Assembly (NCBI GenBank): GCA_965649765.1 | Contig: OZ287760.1 | Location: 25,358,001-25,422,000 of the forward strand | Source: Bispira polyomma | Taxonomy: Eukaryota | DNA length: 64,000 nucleotides | Direction: 5' to 3' | In this document: positions 3,360-36,244 of the stretch, piece by piece | Layout of the letters: the number at the start of each line of letters is the position of its first letter | Numbering within the stretch: position 1 is the stretch's first letter | Position numbers and translations under genes: made by a program | Notes under the pieces: generated by a model | Databases searched by the model: none | Told to the model about the DNA's origin: nothing | What the model saw: the letters and a program-made list of their open reading frames with translations, nothing else

Positions 3360-5520
3360 GCAAAGCTTAGAGGACCGAGGTAACAAAGAGACACCACGCA
3401 GCCAACAATCTGAGGACCGAGGTAACAAAGAGACACCACACAGCCAACAATCTGACCTGTCAAGACGCCAACCCAGGCGTCCTTCCCCCGATACAACCGG
3501 TTACGGCACCCTTCACCATGTGAAGCGTGAAAGGGAGTTGCGCCCCTTGCCGCCGGATGCTACGGGGTGGGTTAATACTCAATCTGGTTGCTTGCTGATC
3601 AACCAGCTGTTAACCCCCCTACCCTTACGACCTTGCTATGCCCATGGACTTTACGATTGGATCACTGATTCTGCTGTTGCGCTTTAGAAGATGCCTGGCA
3701 TCAATAAAGCGCATTAAAAATGCATTATTATTATTATGTGCCAGAAGCAAGCAGTCGTGCATGCCAGAGCTCCCCTACCAGGGCAGGGTATCGTCCTGAC
3801 AGTCCTTAAGGCGAGGAAGTTCTAATGGCTGACAGAGACGGACCGTCTGATGGAGGACATGGAGTCTGACTGACGAGGGGGCCTACCTGTAATGACTAGA
3901 AGATCCCGGGGTGCAGCGGAGAGAGGACACCAAGAGGACGGCAGACGTGCTGATACCAGACTTTTTGACTACCATGATTCTGAAGATTTACTTTTACCAA
4001 GCCAACAGTACTTACGCACAAATGATTACATACAACGCCAAGTCGACGCACGTCTCCAGCGTCATAAAAACAGGTTAGCCTCCTCTCCTGACTACTTAGG
4101 TAAGAAGTTAAAGTCAGGGTTACACCGTACTGGGGAACATACCATTAAAAAACACATAAATTGGCCCCATGAGCACTGTTATGTTAACTCAAGTCAAAAA
4201 TACCCGGTATGTAAAGAACTGACTCCACTTATGTGGTTTCAGGGCTACCTTCAGTGTACGATCGAAGAACCAGATAGTGTGGTTAAAGATATCATGATGC
4301 AATACGGGGTTCAACTTATGAGAGATGTCATGGAAACGTCCTGGTATACCGCTAAGAGAGCTCACTGTGTTTTGCTCTTGGAAATGGAGAAGGGAAAAGT
4401 CGATTGGCAAGATTTGAGAGCAGTCCATGAAATAAGGGCTCACCTTACTCAGCGAATAGTTAAAGAAAGTACCCTGATTCACGTGATTCGACCACTAGTT
4501 CATAAAATAAGGGTAATATTGTTCTCTGCACTGCCTATAACAAAGGCACGTGCACTCAGACTGGGGACCACACTTTCACAGGTATGACTTTAAAACATGA
4601 TTGTGCGAAATGTTTCAAAAGAACTAAAAAATTCAGTGCTTATAGGGAAATCAATTGTAGGGGCTAGGAAAATGGGAGAAGCCTCCAGCCAACCCAAAAG
4701 TATAAAGACAAAATCAAGAACTTTTTGGAACACAGCTTGGTTGGACGCATTTACAAAAACACACAAATTAAATGAAACAAAAAAATTTAATTCTTAAAAA
4801 AGGGTTTTTGTGGGACAAAAACAGGAAAAGCAAAATGAGGTAAAAAGTAAACAAAAATTCCCGCCCTCCACAACCCATGCAATTGATCAAAAAATTGTAA
4901 ATAATGTGTCAAAATATCAACAAGTCTGTGTACAAGAAGTAAGTCAAGAATGGGCCATTTTGTCAAATGAAATGGGGAGTCAATATGGTTGCCCCAATTA
5001 CTTGGGAGCAAGAATCTCAGTACCCTCAGAAATAAATATTCCTGCATGGAGAAATTTGTTAAAAAATGACCCAGACGTCTTACTCCCTGAATATTTGGAA
5101 TTTTGGTTCCCCTTGTGTATACAAAAATAGGGATTTGTGTTTTACACTGTAGCCAAAAATCACGATTCAGCAACACAAACCCCTCAAAGTGTCGATAATT
5201 ATTTTCTAACAGAACCACTTCACAAGGCTATAGCAGGCCCTTTCAAAACACCACCATTTGAACAATTGCATTTTTCCCCTGTCATGACTCGGCCAAAAAC
5301 TGACAACTCTAGACGAATAATAGTGGATTTATCATGGCCTCACAACAACTCTTCTGTGAAGAATGCTGTGTTAAATGGGGTGTATGACGCCCATGAATTT
5401 CGGCTTACTTTACCAAATATAGATATGCTAGTTGACAGGATTAATTACCTTGGCCCTCAGTGTTTATTATATAAGACCGATTTGTCTTGGGCTTCTAGAA
5501 ATTCGCATATTGATCTGGTT
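3360..5520 (+). mobile_element. Degenerate DIRS/Ngaro-like (tyrosine-recombinase class) retrotransposon fragment: gag-like ORF and N-terminal RT
   Basis: gag-like ORF 3892-4587 followed by a frameshifted Cys/His finger LCTAYNKGTCTQTGDH...KHDCAKC (~4525-4615). RT motifs NYLGARISVP, NHDSA, IAGPF, SPVMTRPK, RRIIVDLSWP and YKTDLS. Truncated before YxDD; no recombinase seen. The 5' boundary is approximate. Confidence 0.75.
3498..3736 (+). mobile_element. SINE-like repeat with L2-type 3' tail, nested in the DIRS-like element
   Basis: Highly similar inverted copy at 22468-22702; ends gcgctttagaagatgcctggcatcaataaagcgcattaaaaatgc(att)n. Confidence 0.75.
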
Positions 5521-8157: not shown

Positions 8158-8440
8158 ATCTCTGTGGCCTAGTGATTAGAGTATCGGACTTTGGATCTGA
8201 AAGTTCGATCCTCGCTGCTGGCCTGGGGATTGTACCCTTGAACAAGGTACTTTGCACAAAGTTATCCCTCTCCACCGAGATGTATAAATGGGTACCTGTC
8301 TGCTAATGAGTGTTAGTCTTTGTGCTGCATGTGGCAGCACAGCTAGTATTCTTCCTGAGGGAGCTGAGACTTAACAATTGGTTGACAAGTGGAAATAAAT
8401 GATGTTCAGAACGGCGCTATATCAAATGATAATTATTATT
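8158..8440 (+). mobile_element. tRNA-derived SINE (CORE/Deu-Nin-like body)
   Basis: A box tggcctagtgattag, B box gttcgatcc, then cccttgaacaaggtacttt, tataaatgggtacc and cctgagggagctgag. Minus-strand copies at ~20620-20890, ~33905-34185 and ~18440-18560. Confidence 0.75.
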
Positions 8441-8799
8441 ATCAATAGTATACTGAGATATAACCGGCACTTGTGACCATTCGTTTTAATAGAGCTTTCA
8501 GCACTAAATCCAACTATGCAGTCAGATTTTAGTGAACTTAACACGTTGGACAGAGATATAACTGTGGACTTTAATTTATCAAAGTGGTTATTTACACAAC
8601 GGCTGTGTACGCAAGAGGAAGTCTTGGTGTTGGGTGCACAACGAATATCAATGTTAGACTCTATGGAACTCGATTCACTATACCCGATTTTGGTCCTAAA
8701 TAGAACTGTATTCTAAGTCCAAACATTTTATACCAAAAATACAAGGTTTTACTCGAACTTCGATCTTTAATTTTAGGCATTAATTGAACCCATTTTAAA

Positions 8800-30192: not shown

Positions 30193-31561
30193 ACGATGGC
30201 AAATTTTAGATTCCTTACTCTAACATTAAGCACTCAATTGCACTCATCCAAATAACGTATTTTTTTTCTCATGTTGTTTCCATTCGACCGTCGGCAAGTA
30301 ACAGCCAACTATCCCACTTAAAAGCCCGAACGAAATTCGAACTGGGACCCTAGAGGTGGGAGGCGAAGTGTGTTAGCACTGCGCCATTGAGGCCCCACAA
30401 AAACTCAGTGAAAACCCCATTTTAAGTAGAACTCTGTTAAGTTAGTGTTCTATTCAGTTGTTATGGTGAATAATTTTGTAGTCCCACTAAAAAAGTCTTC
30501 TCTCTTTTAAAATCTACTCTGCTAAGTGGAAATCTTTCTAAAATAGAGGTAAATCTCCTGGCCCCATATTCACTAACATTCCTCTTCAGAGAAAACTACT
30601 CTCATTTACGGAAGAGTATAAGGGCCAACGTTTGTTTTTTTTTAATTGTCGAGATAATATCTCAATAAATCAAGATAATTCGGAAAAAAAAATAAATTTT
30701 GTTTTTTGAATTGTCGAGATAATATCTCGATAAATCGAGATAATTTAGAATTATTTTTTGGGGAATTGTAGGCAATTTCTGAAAAAACAATTCTAAGAAT
30801 ATGAATTTCTAAGAATTGTCATAAAAATGACTTTTCCACAAACAAATCCATGCTTAAGTCAACAACTAAAATATTGTTGCTACCTCTTTTGTACACAGCT
30901 ATAATTAAACTGAATTGTTCAATTATGTTCACTTTTGGAAATCTAACCATTCTCAGACCAGGGATTTTTTTACAAATTGCTGGTTTTCCTCTAAAAGTCC
31001 TAGAATAAAGGAGGCAGTTTCCCGAAGCTGGCGCCAAAGTATTAGTGAAGTGAATACCTGATGTAAAGTAAGGCTGATGAAGAAAGCAAGACAAGTTTAG
31101 AAAACCTTTGGGCTTTCCATTTACACACACAGAACACAATGTTAACACACTTCTACGTACCTTAACGTAAGGGTACCTTAACTTTTGGTTGCACGCTCTG
31201 CATGTTTGAGTTTAAGGCGACCTGAACTTTAGGCCACCTTAGCTTTAAAGGTTTTACGTATGTGTTTGTGAGTATAAACCCCCGGTCTATCGAGCACGAC
31301 AACTTCAGGGGCCTGCTGAATCAGTTCCACATCCTAGTAAATACCCCTTTTAAAAACTATTCTTGTTCCCAAGTACATACTTCCCACACTTCTCCCAATT
31401 AGCCAATCACTAATTAGACCACCTTTCATTAGAAATTATGTCCCCACTTTTGGGTGCCATATTGGACCAAGCATTCAAAGGGTCAACAACAAAAAACGAA
31501 ATTTTATTCCCAGCACCAACCCCTAAGATTTCACCACTTAAGTTACATTTTACTAGGGAAG

Positions 31562-31725
31562 GCAGGGTGAAGACTGAACTCATGGCCGGGTGAAGATCGG
31601 GTAGTCTTTTCGCTCTCCTCTGAGCCCAACTATAGTGGCCAGGGTAGAATAAGGGCGATCTGACCATTCTTTTTCTTTGCTAGGTGATTAGGTACCACAG
31701 GCCTCGGGCTCCACGGACTCCCTGC
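31562..31725 (+). ncRNA. Candidate structured RNA element, copy A (mirror copy 34797-34960, minus strand)
   Basis: Nested helices shared with copy B through compensatory changes (see findings). Expression is not shown. Confidence 0.55.
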
Positions 31726-31776
31726 ATGTCCAGTAAGATTAAGTACAAATTAGGTAAATAAAAATTTCAGAGAATG

Positions 31777-31940
31777 GCAGACGGGTGGTTGAACTCTCGG
31801 CTGTGTGGAGACGTTTTCAGTCCTTGTTCCCTCCTCTGAGCCCAACTGTAGTGGCCAGGGTTGAATAAGGGGACAGGGACTGAATTCTTCTCTGCTAGGT
31901 GAATAGGTACCATAGGCCTCGGGTTCCATTGCACGTCTGC
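31777..31940 (+). ncRNA. Candidate structured RNA element, copy B (mirror copy 34582-34745, minus strand)
   Basis: GCAGACG/CGUCUGC outer stem and a 17-bp inner stem with two G-U pairs; conserved loop blocks shared with copy A. Confidence 0.55.
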
Positions 31941-34183
31941 GCAAATCAGTGAAAAGTACATTGATTATTTATTAACTTAGTTATAAATGTCGGATGGGCC
32001 ACAGGCCTACTAAATCGGTTGACAATGTCAACCATAGTGTGAAACTTGCATGTGTATTTGTCCGCTGTCGTGGGCTCACTGCTGTGACATTATGTCAGTG
32101 GTCTTGAATTAAAGAAATAATAGAGTAAATGTAATATACTGAATCAATGTGGTGGGCTAGTCCCAGGAACACTTATATCTGGTGTTTATAGACGTAGTTG
32201 TACCCCTGATAATTTTAATGGTTTTAATGTAACGGGCTAGTCCCATAAGCTTCAACTATATGGGTTGTTTGCTTTATATTTACACTAGTTATTTTGTACT
32301 TTTATTTACGTGCTTTGTTATACTAGTATTATTATATATCTTTTATTCTGTTGAAGGGTTCATTTAAAATTTCAGCTACCTCTTCAATTTTAAATATTTT
32401 ATACTAATTACTGTATATTGTACATAGCATACTAACTTGTACAGAAAAATAAACTCCAAAACAGTATCTTTTCATTGTCTTATATCACTAACCATAGACA
32501 CTTTGATATCAACAACTTACTTTGACTACACATAGGGAACTGCCTCGAGGTTTGACTAAAAGGGGGTTTGACCCTAAAATGGGGTTTACCTGTTGAGCTC
32601 CCTTCTATTTGATTAACTTTCTATTCTCCAAACACATATTAACACTCTCCTACTTTGTTGGATAATAGAGCTTCTAATGAGTAGTCGCAAAGAACAGATG
32701 TTCATCAATTATGTAGTATATACATTCACCTTTCTTTGGGAATACAGTGTAACTTCTGTTATTCAAACATGTTCGCATTACAGAAGGTTTCATTAGATAA
32801 ATTGAGGCATTTCAGAATGTGGTGTTTTTCTGGTTTGCCCCTTTCTTGACTGGAAGAAAAAAAATGCCGGTATAACTGAGGGATTTTTTTCTGGTAAGAG
32901 GTTACAGACAGCTTGAATCACTGAGAGACACACAACAGATTACTTTTGGCACTCAATAATGACCTGTTGAATGTAAAAATTTTTAAACAAAGTAGTCTGC
33001 TGTTCTAAACAATTTCCTATTTCCAGGAACTGAGGGAAAAATAAACTCATATTTTTTGGGGTGGTGTCGGCTGCCTGCCGATAGGCATAGGGTTCTGGGA
33101 GTCACAAATTGGAACTGTATGTACAAAAAATTGGATGTGGGCTGTTGTGAAAGCATGGAATTCCCCCCCCCCCACCCCCCCCCGACACAGAATGTCTAGA
33201 TGAAAAAAACACACGTATTATCCGAGCCTATTAAGGAGAGTAAAGGGCTTTACAGACCACAACACGACACAACGTTTTTAAGAGATTTATCTAAGGCCAA
33301 TCACACTGACGTGCAGTGTCATGCTAGGACTAGTCTCAATAATCAATATATATTGTCTTTATATTTATGTAGTGTCGTGTTGTGTCGTGGGCGGCCTGTT
33401 AAAGCCCTTTCGTTGGGATAACAGAGCTGTTTTCATAACACAGAAGAGGGTTATTTGAGAGTTATATTCACAAAGAGTGTTATATTCATAAAACAATAGG
33501 AAAATGTCGGTTTAGAAGAAGAATGCAAATATGTTCATCAATATTAGGATAATGAGGGAGCTAAATAAAAGTCATCAATCCACCATCGAAATTTTGCGAT
33601 AAATATAGTCACATTTTGACACAGGTATTGCCAAAGTCCTTAACCAATCTCTGTATCCAGTGCAGTGTGAATGAGCCAATACTTTACATACACTTGTGGA
33701 GGAGGTAAGGCTGTCATGACAAAAAGGCGTTTTTCCCTTCTCCCGAGGCAAGTTGCCAAGATGAGGAAACACACGTACATATTGCTGACAAGTGACATAA
33801 ATAACAGGAAATAGTTGTAGTAATCTTTTTGTAGTAGAACGTCTATAATAATTATCATTTTTTTTTTTGGTATATCACTGTTATCTAATGCATTTTGACA
33901 TTATTACCCCGACCTGGGTTCTTCCACTTGTCTATCAATTGTTCAGTCTCAGCTCCCTCAGGAAGCATACAAGCCATGCTGTCACATAAGGGCACAAAGA
34001 CAAACACCACACCAGGGCCCGTATTCATTAACAGACTGAGCCAAGTCTTAGGCTTAAATCTAGTATCCTTAGGTTAGGGCCCAGGGTAGAGAGGGGCAAC
34101 TGTGTGTAAAGTACCTTGTCCAAAGACACAATCACCAGACCAGCAGCGAGGATTGGACCAGAACTGAAGTTTGACATTCAAGC

Positions 34184-34229
<46 letters not shown>

Positions 34230-34233
<4 letters not shown>

Positions 34234-36244
34234 CTAGTGTAAATATAAAGCAAACAACCCATATAGTTGAAGCTTATGGGACTAGCCCGTTACATTAAAA
34301 CCATTAAAATTATCAGGGGTACAACTACGTCTATAAACACCAGATATAAGTGTTCCTGGGACTAGCCCACCACATTGATTCAGTATATTACATTTACTCT
34401 ATTATTTCTTTAATTCAAGACCACTGACATAATGTCACAGCAGTGAGCCCACGACAGCGGACAAATACACATGCAAGTTTCGCACTATGGTTGACATTGT
34501 CAACCGATTTAGTAGGCCTGTGGCCCATCCGACATTTATAACTAAGTTAATAAATAATCAATGTACTTTTCACTGATTTGCGCAGACGTGCAATGGAACC
34601 CGAGGCCTATGGTACCTATTCACCTAGCAGAGAAGAATTCAGTCCCTGTCCCCTTATTCAACCCTGGCCACTACAGTTGGGCTCAGAGGAGGGAACAAGG
34701 ACTGAAAACGTCTCCACACAGCCGAGAGTTCAACCACCCGTCTGCCATTCTCTGAAATTTTTATTTACCTAATTTGTACTTAATCTTACTGGACATGCAG
34801 GGAGTCCGTGGAGCCCGAGGCCTGTGGTACCTAATCACCTAGCAAAGAAAAAGAATGGTCAGATCGCCCTTATTCTACCCTGGCCACTATAGTTGGGCTC
34901 AGAGGAGAGCGAAAAGACTACCCGATCTTCACCCGGCCATGAGTTCAGTCTTCACCCTGCCTTCCCTAGTAAAATGTAACTTAAGTGGTGAAATCTTAGG
35001 GGTTGGTGCTGGGAATAAAATTTCGTTTTTTGTTGTTGACCCTTTGAATGCTTGGTCCAATATGGCACCCAAAAGTGGGGACATAATTTCTAATGAAAGG
35101 TGGTCTAATTAGTGATTGGCTAATTGGGAGAAGTGTGGGAAGTATGTACTTGGGAACAAGAATAGTTTTTAAAAGGGGTATTTACTAGGATGTGGAACTG
35201 ATTCAGCAGGCCCCTGAAGTTGTCGTGCTCGATAGACCGGGGGTTTATACTCACAAACACATATGTAACCTTTAAAGCTAAGGTGGCCTAAAGTTCAGGT
35301 CGCCTTAAACTCAAACATGCAGAGCGTGCAACCAAAAGTTAAGGTACCCTTACGTTAAGGTACGTAGAAGTGTGTTAACATTGTGTTCTGTGTGTGTAAA
35401 TGGAAACCCCAAAGGTTTTCTAAACTTGTCTTGCTTTCTTCACCAGCCTTACTTTACATCAGGTATTCACTTCACTAATACTGAGAATGGTTAGATTTCC
35501 AAAAGTGAACATAATTGAACAATTCAGTTTAATTATAGCTGTGTACAAAAGAGGTAGCAACAATATTTTAGTTGTTGACTTAAGCATGGATTTGTTTGTG
35601 GAAAAGTCATTTTTATGACAATTCTTAGAAATTCATATTCTTAGAATTGTTTTTTCAGAAATTGCCTACAATTCCCCAAAAAATAATTCTAAATTATCTC
35701 GATTTATCGAGATATTATCTCGACAATTCAAAAAACAAAATTTATTTTTTTTTCCGAATTATCTTGATTTATTGAGATATTATCTCGACAATTAAAAAAA
35801 AACAAACGTTGGCCCTTATACTCTTCCGTAAATGAGAGTAGTTTTCTCTGAAGAGGAATGTTAGTGAATATGGGGCCAGGAGATTTACCTCTATTTTAGA
35901 AAGATTTCCACTTAGCAGAGTAGATTTTAAAAGAGAGAAGACTTTTTTAGTGGGACTACAAAATTATTCACCATAACAACTGAATAGAACACTAACTTAA
36001 CAGAGTTCTACTTAAAATGGGGTTTTCACTGAGTTTTTGTGGGGCCTCAATGGCGCAGTGCTAACACACTTCGCCTCCCACCTCTAGGGTCCCAGTTCGA
36101 ATTTCGTCCGGGCTTTTAAGTGGGATAGTTGGCTGTTACTTGCCGACGGTCGAATGGAAACAACATGAGAAAAAAAATACGTTATTTGGATGAGTGCAAT
36201 TGAGTGCTTAATGTTAGAGTAAGGAATCTAAAATTTGCCATCGT
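34230..36244 (-). repeat. Right arm of the inverted duplication
   Basis: About 99% identical to the left arm. Lacks 83 bp corresponding to 30957-31039 and abuts (TA)n at 34186-34231. Confidence 0.97.

What the first reader, a model, noticed from the sequence alone, without database searches (positions are those of the whole stretch)
31562..31940. Tandem pair of 164-nt structured RNA modules with compensatory base changes: candidate unrecognised ribozyme or cis-acting RNA
Seen: two diverged copies start 215 nt apart (A 31562-31725, B 31777-31940), both exactly 164 nt. The stems differ in sequence but keep pairing. Outer stem: GCAGGG/CCCUGC (A) vs GCAGACG/CGUCUGC (B). Next: GAACUC/GGGYUC and GGCY/GGCC. 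Middle helix: GUGAAGA/UCUUUGC vs GUGGAGA/UCUCUGC (A-U to G-C swap). Inner stem: UCGCUCU/AGGGCGA vs UUCAGUCCUUGUUCCCU/AGGGGACAGGGACUGAA. Two blocks between the stems are nearly invariant: CCUCUGAGCCCAACUNUAGUGGCCAGGGUNGAAUA and UGCUAGGUGAWUAGGUACCAYAGGCCUCGGGYUCCA. Most non-Watson-Crick pairs are G-U on this strand (C-A on the other), which points to an RNA and gives its orientation. GAGCCC could also pair with GGGYUC, giving an alternative fold or pseudoknot. Inference: variable helices around a conserved core is the signature of a functional RNA. A tandem ~200-nt spacing recalls retrozyme-like ribozyme repeats or duplicated retroelement export/packaging signals. I see no hammerhead (CUGANGA/GAAA), HDV, twister, tRNA or snRNA consensus.
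Basis: partly seen in the sequence, partly recalled or inferred. Interest (0 to 1): 0.85.

Follow-up and report, generated by a model that had tools for sequence, protein, structure and literature searches.

The report
Structured RNA pair inside Ngaro retrotransposon
The two 164-base modules are real and their RNA fold has been kept by selection, but they are not a free-standing ribozyme gene: they sit in the non-coding tail of a jumping gene that inserts with a tyrosine recombinase, and most likely act as a signal on that element's own RNA.

Summary
Modules A (31562-31725) and B (31777-31940) are 164 nt each, about 81-85% alike, and fold into the same three-way junction.

The context changes the reading. 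The pair lies in a dispersed 1.25-kb unit (window 31290-32542; about 48 pairs genome-wide). In at least 13 loci this unit directly follows a 4.9-kb part encoding gag, RT and a tyrosine recombinase. The full element is therefore A1-ORFs-B1-A2-X-B2, the split direct repeats of Ngaro-type retrotransposons, and the modules lie in the A2-B2 spacer X. The window copy is a solo A-X-B remnant.

Evidence for selection on a plus-strand RNA fold:
- G.U pairs outnumber A.C cells 612 to 79.
- 8-10 pairs differ on both sides between lineages yet stay paired.
- The modules are as conserved between subfamilies as the terminal repeats; the linker is not.

No Rfam family or known ribozyme matches. No RNA data could be found. 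The function is inferred: a cis-acting recognition, packaging or dimerisation signal on the read-through replicative RNA.

Two first-reader notes of this scan (s1-581962, s1-590174) describe the same kind of feature on other pieces of this genome.

The parts
31290..32542 (+). Solo A-X-B copy of a Ngaro-like tyrosine-recombinase retrotransposon (its 3' unit, without the coding part)
   Evidence: Sharp homology limits in about 28 loci, 68-97% identity. No target duplication or poly(A) tail seen by eye. Flank junctions are bridged by DNA contigs.
31290..31508 (+). A repeat (equals A1/A2 of the split direct repeats); starts (TG)TCGAGCACGAC
   Evidence: Shared with the 5' end of the 4.9-kb coding element. 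In L033, A1 243-450 and A2 5099-5306 are 97% identical.
31509..32355 (+). Spacer X between A2 and B2; non-coding
   Evidence: Absent from A-ORFs-B copies. Only short ORFs. Relatives in another genome have X of 193-785 nt at the same place.
31562..31725 (+). Module A: three-way-junction RNA module
31777..31940 (+). Module B: paralogue of A with a 17-bp inner stem
   Evidence: z = -5.1 against shuffles.
31617..31645 (+). Conserved apical hairpin of module A; 10-nt loop holding the self-complementary CUAUAG
31833..31861 (+). Conserved apical hairpin of module B; the loop hexamer here is CUGUAG, self-pairing with G.U
32356..32542 (+). B repeat (equals B1/B2); ends GGGAACTG; AATAAA at 32448-32453
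   Evidence: AATAAA lies about 95 nt before the 3' end in 15 of 17 copies and is present in B1/B2 of relatives.
34582..34960 (-). Second, inverted copy of the module pair (B' 34582-34745, A' 34797-34960)
   Evidence: Lies in the palindrome arm 34230-36244, which is 100% complementary to 30193-32292.

Best explanation
SHOWN:
- The pair belongs to the non-coding spacer X between the A2 and B2 repeats at the 3' end of a Ngaro-like tyrosine-recombinase retrotransposon. Its layout is A1, gag, ORF, RT/RNase H, YR, B1, A2, X, B2, about 6.1 kb in all.
- The window holds a solo A-X-B remnant, the product expected from A1 x A2 recombination.
- The two modules are old paralogues. Their fold, on the sense strand of the element, has been kept by purifying and compensatory selection in the active lineages, while the linker and the rest of X drifted.

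INFERRED MECHANISM:
- B carries a conserved AATAAA, so transcripts can end in B1 (a message for the proteins) or read through to B2.
- Only the read-through RNA carries the B1|A2 junction that the split-repeat model needs to rebuild the element, and only it carries X.
- The modules would therefore mark the replication-competent RNA. The element's Gag-like or RT protein would recognise the invariant apical hairpin and junction blocks.
- The self-complementary loop hexamer (CUAUAG) could let two RNAs, or modules A and B, kiss. This would resemble retroviral packaging and dimerisation signals.
For: Context:
- The unit 31290-32542 recurs in about 28 sampled loci.
- In 13 loci the upstream DNA is the RT/YR part plus B, running to the locus edge.
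- RT is PF00078. The last ORF has weak SAM-like and catalytic integrase hits in the right order, and its relatives are abundant.
- Relatives in another assembly show A1...B1-A2-X-B2 with 97-100% identical repeats.
- Solo and composite copies are interspersed on the tree: 7 changes, no fewer than shuffled labels.

Structure:
- 91.7% of cells are paired against 36-52% when partners are slid; 28 pairs show double changes.
- 8-10 pairs differ on both sides between clade majorities. Two of these lie inside the A lineage: 26-202 CG to UA and 50-167 AU to GC.
- Departures private to single copies keep a pair in 55-58% of cases; clade-level differences do so in 90-95%.
- G.U 612 against A.C 79.
- RNAalifold on an unfitted alignment of 17 diverse copies gives the same junction.

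Selection:
- Between-subfamily identity is 82-86% for the modules, 85-87% for the A and B repeats, 56% for the linker and 74% for the rest of X. Within subfamilies it is about 95% everywhere.

Mechanism hints:
- AATAAA is conserved in B.
- The loop hexamer is CUAUAG or CUGUAG in 62 of 70 modules.
Against: - No RNA data. The only runs found are DNA, so transcription, read-through at B1 and the RNA ends are all unobserved.
- Module A's energy is no better than shuffles.
- The covariance-model alignment is fitted to a structure derived from the window's own two modules. Many double changes are a single A-versus-B event each.
- Relatives in the other genome have an X spacer but no detectable module, so the modules are not a general requirement of the clade.
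- A palindromic hexamer in a 10-nt loop is expected by chance in roughly 1 case in 12.
- In L043 both loops carry CUAUUG, which weakens self-pairing.
- The invariant blocks could equally be DNA-level protein sites.
Confidence: 0.55

Rival explanations
1. A2-X-B2 is its own transcription unit. A2 would act as promoter and B2 as terminator, giving a structured non-coding RNA of about 0.9 kb. This RNA would act in trans, for example as scaffold, primer or decoy against host silencing. Solo A-X-B copies would keep making it.
For: - A is duplicated upstream of X and B (with AATAAA) downstream of it.
- A holds CCAAT- and CArG-like motifs (read).
- Solo copies are frequent.
- The modules are conserved like functional parts.
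Against: - No transcript data.
- The promoter motifs were read by eye only.
- Solos do not form a lineage of their own, so nothing shows that they are kept for expression.
Confidence: 0.15
2. The modules are self-cleaving ribozymes of an undescribed class. Two cuts 215 nt apart would release a unit-length RNA, as in retrozymes.
For: - Tandem structured modules with invariant junction and loop blocks.
- Other retroelement classes do carry ribozymes (general knowledge: hammerheads in Penelope-like elements, HDV-like ribozymes in R2 and RTE).
Against: - No match to any Rfam ribozyme, even at E<=10, in the window or in four diverged copies.
- The modules lie mid-spacer, not at a transcript end where processing would help the element.
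- There are only two copies, never arrays.
- Contigs gave no unit-length joint. The runs are DNA, so this says little.
Confidence: 0.04
3. There is no RNA function. The pairing would reflect DNA-level hairpins or palindromes, or protein-binding sites for the recombinase or host factors on the circular or single-stranded DNA intermediate.
For: - The most conserved parts never vary, so they cannot distinguish RNA from DNA.
- Module B's inner stem is a near-perfect 17-bp inverted repeat.
- DIRS-1 is reported to move through single-stranded cDNA (PMC7192593, title and abstract).
Against: - The G.U over A.C excess of 612 to 79 means the minus-strand cDNA would carry mismatches where the plus strand pairs.
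- The compensatory changes are spread over five helices, not one palindrome.
- Duplex DNA sites would not need paired columns at all.
Confidence: 0.12
4. The long hairpins are precursors of small RNAs (miRNA- or siRNA-like), made either for the element or against it.
For: Module B's stem gives weak hits to miRNA hairpin models: mir-4650 at 29.8 bits, E 4e-4.
Against: - The score is far below the gathering score of 80.7, and the opposite strand scores too.
- Module A's stem is interrupted.
- Conservation is highest in loops and junctions, not in a mature-arm-like stretch.
Confidence: 0.04

Closest known systems
Ngaro retrotransposons (tyrosine-recombinase retroelements with split direct repeats A1...B1-A2-B2; described in PMC9210276, PMC4157794, PMC3783388)
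   Same: - gag-like, RT/RNase H and YR genes in that order.
- No methyltransferase domain found.
- Direct repeats, with the internal B1-A2 pair downstream of YR.
- No target duplication seen.
- Low copy number.
   Different: - A2 and B2 are separated by a long non-coding spacer: 847 nt here, 193-785 nt in relatives.
- Here the spacer holds two selected RNA modules. The papers read describe no such RNA structure.
Retroviral packaging and dimerisation signals (Psi; DIS hairpins with a palindromic loop) - from general knowledge
   Same: - Structured sense-strand RNA in a non-coding part that only the full-length replicative RNA would carry.
- Hairpin loop with a 6-nt self-complementary sequence.
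- Two hairpins in series.
   Different: - Lies near the 3' end, not in the 5' leader.
- No sequence relation.
- Binding and dimerisation are untested.
- The element has no retroviral integrase or protease.
3' stem-loops recognised by the reverse transcriptase of stringent LINEs and their SINEs (PMC5135761, abstract)
   Same: A conserved 3'-proximal RNA structure that would serve as the identity tag of the retroelement's template.
   Different: - Those are short single hairpins at the very 3' end of elements that use target-primed reverse transcription.
- These are 164-nt junction modules about 420-800 nt from the end of a YR element.
Duplicated 3'-UTR structures of flaviviruses (tandem xrRNA and dumbbell elements) - from general knowledge, analogy only
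   Same: Tandem paralogous junction-type modules in a 3' non-coding region. The loops and junctions are conserved while the stems co-vary.
   Different: - No homology.
- No evidence of exonuclease stalling.
- Different kind of genetic element.
Retrozymes and Penelope-like elements with hammerhead ribozymes
   Same: Non-coding structured RNA repeats within a retroelement.
   Different: - No hammerhead or other known ribozyme motif.
- The flanking repeats are Ngaro A and B repeats, not LTRs.
- There is a pair, never an array.

Membership tests
Ngaro (YR retrotransposon) | Reverse transcriptase domain | tested here: met
   PF00078 RVT_1, E 3.5e-12, in L032 6335-7816(-); YIDD motif present.
Ngaro (YR retrotransposon) | Tyrosine recombinase ORF downstream of RT | tested here: inconclusive
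   - 271-aa ORF with sub-threshold Phage_int_SAM_4 (N-terminal) and Phage_integrase (C-terminal) hits.
- Invariant H214/R217-218 and Y248 in 19 relatives.
- A profile of the relatives hits XerH only at E 0.87.
- Some relatives have precomputed PF13495 or faint PF00589 hits.
Ngaro (YR retrotransposon) | Split direct repeats A1...B1-A2-B2, with the internal pair downstream of YR | tested here: met
   - L033 has A1 and A2 at 97% identity, with B1 directly before A2.
- In 13 loci the coding part plus B lies directly upstream of A-X-B.
- Relatives show both repeat pairs at 97-100% identity.
Ngaro (YR retrotransposon) | No methyltransferase domain (this separates Ngaro from DIRS and PAT) | tested here: met
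   Pfam finds only RVT_1 in the pol ORF, and the gap to YR leaves no room. This is negative evidence only.
DIRS1-like | Inverted terminal repeats with an internal complementary region | tested here: not met
   No inverted terminal repeats in the unit or in L033; the repeats are direct.
Retrozyme / hammerhead-bearing retroelement | Hammerhead ribozyme motif in the repeats | tested here: not met
   No Rfam hit at gathering score in 64 kb, none at E<=10 over 31300-32200, and none in four diverged copies.
Retrozyme / LTR-type non-autonomous element | Long terminal repeats flanking the unit | tested here: not met
   The apparent upstream 'LTR' is the B1 repeat of the coding part. Homology continues into the YR ORF.
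SINE | High copy number, free-standing copies, Pol III boxes with terminator or tail | tested here: not met
   - 95 core-motif sites genome-wide, and in every locus fetched they lie within this element family.
- No tRNA, 7SL or 5S match.
- T-runs inside module A would stop Pol III.
miRNA precursor (mir-4650 and others) | Score at or above the Rfam gathering threshold | tested here: not met
   29.8 bits against a threshold of 80.7; both strands hit.
Retroviral-type dimerisation hairpin | Hairpin loop with a conserved self-complementary hexamer | tested here: met
   CUAUAG in 55 and CUGUAG in 7 of 70 modules. This is a resemblance only.
Retroviral-type dimerisation hairpin | RNA dimer formation and Gag binding | not testable with these tools
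   Needs in vitro RNA and protein work.

The most novel reading that the evidence does not exclude
The A2-X-B2 unit makes a separate, stable structured RNA, or its two modules are a new class of self-processing RNA. Either way the RNA would act in trans in the life cycle of tyrosine-recombinase retroelements, for instance as the still unknown primer or scaffold for their reverse transcription. Solo A-X-B copies scattered in the genome would then keep supplying it.
Probability: 0.1. Interest if true: 0.8.

Novelty: new variant of a known kind. Interest (0 to 1): 0.5.

Why it matters
How tyrosine-recombinase retrotransposons (DIRS, Ngaro) choose, prime and copy their RNA is poorly understood. 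In the papers I could search, I found no cis-acting RNA structure described for them.

This finding offers a defined pair of modules under selection, placed where only a read-through transcript would carry it. That gives a concrete handle for testing the split-repeat replication model and for asking what the element's Gag-like protein binds.

It also warns annotators about these families. A 1.25-kb unit that looks 'non-autonomous', and the apparent 'LTR' upstream of it, are pieces of one larger element.

Tried and rejected
- **LTR or TRIM-like non-autonomous element, and Penelope-like pseudo-LTR.** These were my first readings. I rejected them when the upstream 'LTR' proved to continue into the YR ORF and solo copies did not form their own lineage.
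- **Transposon terminal inverted repeats.** I considered this for the inverted second pair. I rejected it because the two arms are a 2.1-kb, 100% identical palindrome that includes 1.1 kb of non-element flank.
- **Abundant SINE or a known SINE core domain.** Rejected on copy number. Dfam and Repbase were not available, so a distant relation to a SINE domain is untested.
- **Modules inside the coding element.** None found with filters off.
- **Homologous modules in relatives from another genome.** None found by covariance model, nhmmer or sensitive blastn. Their spacers show no similar fold or energy signal.
- **Expression.** No RNA run holds the stretch. The three runs laid are DNA.
- **Fetching the full upstream parts of the composite loci.** Complete 6.1-kb copies in this genome were therefore inferred from overlapping pieces, not read end to end.
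- **Consensus or ancestral sequences.** None were built. Clade comparisons are counts of pair types only.

Full report
**1. The observation**

Window 31562-31725 (A) and 31777-31940 (B) are each 164 nt, start 215 nt apart, and align at 81-85% identity with one indel each. The 29-nt core block occurs four times in the window and never in 100 shuffles. Two of the four are an inverted copy of the whole pair at 34582-34960. That copy exists because 30193-32292 and 34230-36244 form a 100% complementary 2.1-kb palindrome.

Each module folds alone into the same architecture. It has closing helices, a long hairpin topped by an invariant 8-bp hairpin with a 10-nt loop, and a short GGUG/UACC hairpin. 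A gives -54.1 kcal/mol, which is no better than shuffles (z -0.08). B gives -78 kcal/mol (z -5.1).

Rfam gives nothing at gathering scores in the 64 kb, and ARAGORN finds no tRNA. At E<=10 the only hits are weak miRNA-hairpin models on B's long stem, on both strands.

**2. What the pair belongs to**

The host genome is a 1.04-Gb eukaryote. Module A finds about 40 dispersed loci at 68-100% identity, nearly always with B next to it. The core motif with up to 3 mismatches occurs 95 times, against 0 for the reversed control. That makes roughly 48 pairs, so this is not an abundant SINE.

Aligning the flanks shows a unit with sharp ends at window 31290 and 32542. It starts (TG)TCGAGCACGAC and ends GGGAACTG. 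I saw no poly(A) tail and no target duplication.

Many loci carry an extra copy of the last 190 nt directly upstream. I first took this for an LTR. It is not one:
- Elements of 4.6-5.2 kb share only 31290-31508 ('A') and 32356-32542 ('B') with the unit.
- These elements encode a gag-like ORF, a further ORF, RT (PF00078, YIDD motif) and a 271-aa last ORF. The last ORF has weak N-terminal SAM-like and C-terminal catalytic integrase hits, plus invariant H..R and Y positions.
- In 13 loci the DNA upstream of the unit is this coding element's RT/YR part plus B, continuous to the edge of the locus. The end of the YR ORF can be read directly in front of the 'LTR'.
- The order is always coding part first, and no A follows the last B in any locus.

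The full element is therefore A1-ORFs-B1-A2-X-B2. This is the split direct repeat layout that defines Ngaro and PAT elements (PMC9210276, PMC4157794, PMC3783388). Without a methyltransferase domain it is Ngaro-like. X (31509-32355) is a long spacer between A2 and B2.

The layout is not a local accident. Relatives in another assembly have a YR 48-58% identical in protein. They show the same A1...B1-A2-X-B2 layout with 97-100% identical repeats and X of 193-785 nt.

On a tree of 17 full units, solo (A-X-B only) and composite copies are interspersed. Seven changes of state are needed, no fewer than for shuffled labels. Solos therefore arise repeatedly, as A1 x A2 recombination would give, and are not a separate non-autonomous lineage. 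The window copy is such a solo.

DNA contigs from three runs of the same organism bridge both of its junctions. They also show the unit at several-fold the depth of its flanks.

**3. Is the RNA structure selected?**

A covariance model built from the window's two modules finds 76 instances in the loci held and none in the coding elements, even with filters off.

On that alignment, 91.7% of cells form standard pairs. The figure falls to 36-52% when the 3' partners are slid by 1-3 columns. Twenty-eight pairs show changes on both sides. The alignment is fitted to the model, and many double changes are one A-versus-B event each, so I checked further:

- **Clades.** The modules fall into four clades (A-young, A-old, B-young, B-old) plus about 15 diverged single copies. 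Clade majorities differ on both sides while staying paired at 8 core pairs, or 10 with the outer helix. Two of these lie inside the A lineage: 26-202 CG to UA and 50-167 AU to GC. Diverged copies show third solutions in the lower long hairpin.
- **Private against shared changes.** Departures private to single copies, which reflect decay after insertion, keep a standard pair in 55-58% of cases. Differences between clade majorities keep one in 90-95%.
- **Strand.** G.U cells outnumber A.C cells 612 to 79, so the pairing works on the + strand only. This is the sense strand of the element.
- **Independent prediction.** MAFFT plus RNAalifold on 17 diverse copies, not fitted to the model, returns the same junction, long hairpin and short hairpin. 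It does not return the outer stem, which is mismatched in most lineages.
- **Rates.** Between the two main subfamilies the modules are 82-86% identical, like the essential A and B repeats (85-87%). The 51-nt linker is 56% and the rest of X is 74% with many indels. Within subfamilies every region is about 95%. This is the pattern expected if selection acts on the active lineage and copies decay neutrally after insertion.

I did not build consensus or ancestral sequences. All of the above are counts over natural copies.

**4. How it most likely works (inferred)**

B carries a canonical AATAAA about 95 nt before its end in 15 of 17 copies here, and in both B repeats of the relatives. Transcripts should therefore end inside B.
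- An RNA ending in B1 can serve as a message for the proteins.
- Only an RNA that reads through to B2 contains the internal B1|A2 junction. The split-repeat model uses that junction to restore the ends.
- Only this read-through RNA contains X.

The modules are thus placed to mark the replication-competent RNA.

The parts that never vary are the apical hairpin, the stretch 3' of it, and the junction with the short hairpin. These are the natural candidates for contact with the element's Gag-like protein (which has a Cys/His knuckle) or its RT.

The apical loop holds a self-complementary hexamer: CUAUAG in 55 and CUGUAG in 7 of 70 modules. Both variants can pair with themselves and with each other. 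This recalls retroviral dimerisation hairpins, but by chance alone such a hexamer is expected about once in twelve loops.

I give about 0.55 to 'cis-acting signal on the element's own RNA', and about a third to the specific packaging and dimerisation version.

**5. Rivals**

- A separately transcribed A2-X-B2 RNA acting in trans: 0.15.
- A DNA-level or non-functional reading: 0.12. The strand bias and the spread of compensatory changes over five helices count against it.
- A new ribozyme: 0.04. No known motif matches in the window or in diverged copies, the modules are in the wrong place for end processing, and they never form arrays.
- Small-RNA precursors: 0.04.

**6. What could not be done**

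No RNA-level data exist in the runs served. Dfam and Repbase were not available.

Relatives in the other genome have no detectable homologue of the modules. One family there does have its own diverged tandem pair in X (124 nt, 77% identity, period 226). This hints that duplication of structured pieces in this spacer recurs.

**7. Earlier notes of this scan**

After reaching the reading above, I found that first readers had flagged the same kind of feature on other pieces of this genome. One note reads 'covarying structured RNA in the A2-B2 spacer of two divergent Ngaro retrotransposons' (s1-581962). Another describes a 'densely structured non-coding cassette inside the Ngaro retrotransposon' (s1-590174). 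They agree with this report, but they are unchecked notes, not independent evidence.

**8. Verdict**

The feature is real and under selection, and it is not in Rfam. Its kind is a known one: a cis-acting structured RNA of a retroelement. It sits in a class of element for which I found no such signal described. I rate interest at 0.5.

Noticed in passing
window 30193-32292 and 34230-36244: A 2.1-kb inverted duplication, 100% identical apart from a 94% stretch with a 2-nt indel. It encloses 1.9 kb. One arm ends inside the retroelement unit at 32292, and DNA contigs of three runs also end near 32285-32293. It is either a very recent palindrome or an assembly fold-back.
   Followed up: partly
window 32146-32165 and 32226-32245: A second short direct repeat (AATGTGGTGGGCTAGTCCCA-like, period 80) in the 3' half of spacer X. 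This may be another small duplicated motif.
   Followed up: no
window 32543-32549 versus 31290-31294: The unit's 3' flank reads CC-TCGAG and the unit itself starts with TCGAG. In other copies the 5' flank often ends in TG and the 3' flank often starts with T. This may be a short recombination core of the tyrosine recombinase, or chance.
   Followed up: no
L051 8463-8586 and 8689-8808 (ENA ERZ22147071): A related Ngaro-like family in another genome has its own diverged tandem pair (77% identity, period 226) in the A2-B2 spacer, plus a 30-nt A-run at 8418-8447. It shows no sequence similarity to the modules here.
   Followed up: partly
L033 874-1071: A 99-nt tandem duplication (79% identity) inside the gag-like region of the coding element.
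   Followed up: no
L021, L022 and L023 (C9, 45.6-46.1 Mb): Three copies share the same internal deletion, joining the RT region to position 31499 of the unit, and the same 3' flank. This is a segmental duplication of one rearranged insertion.
   Followed up: no
window 30632-30750 and 35687-35805: Pairs of 54-nt direct repeats (period 65) rich in TCGAGATAAT, lying inside the palindrome arms. They belong to an unrelated repeat.
   Followed up: no
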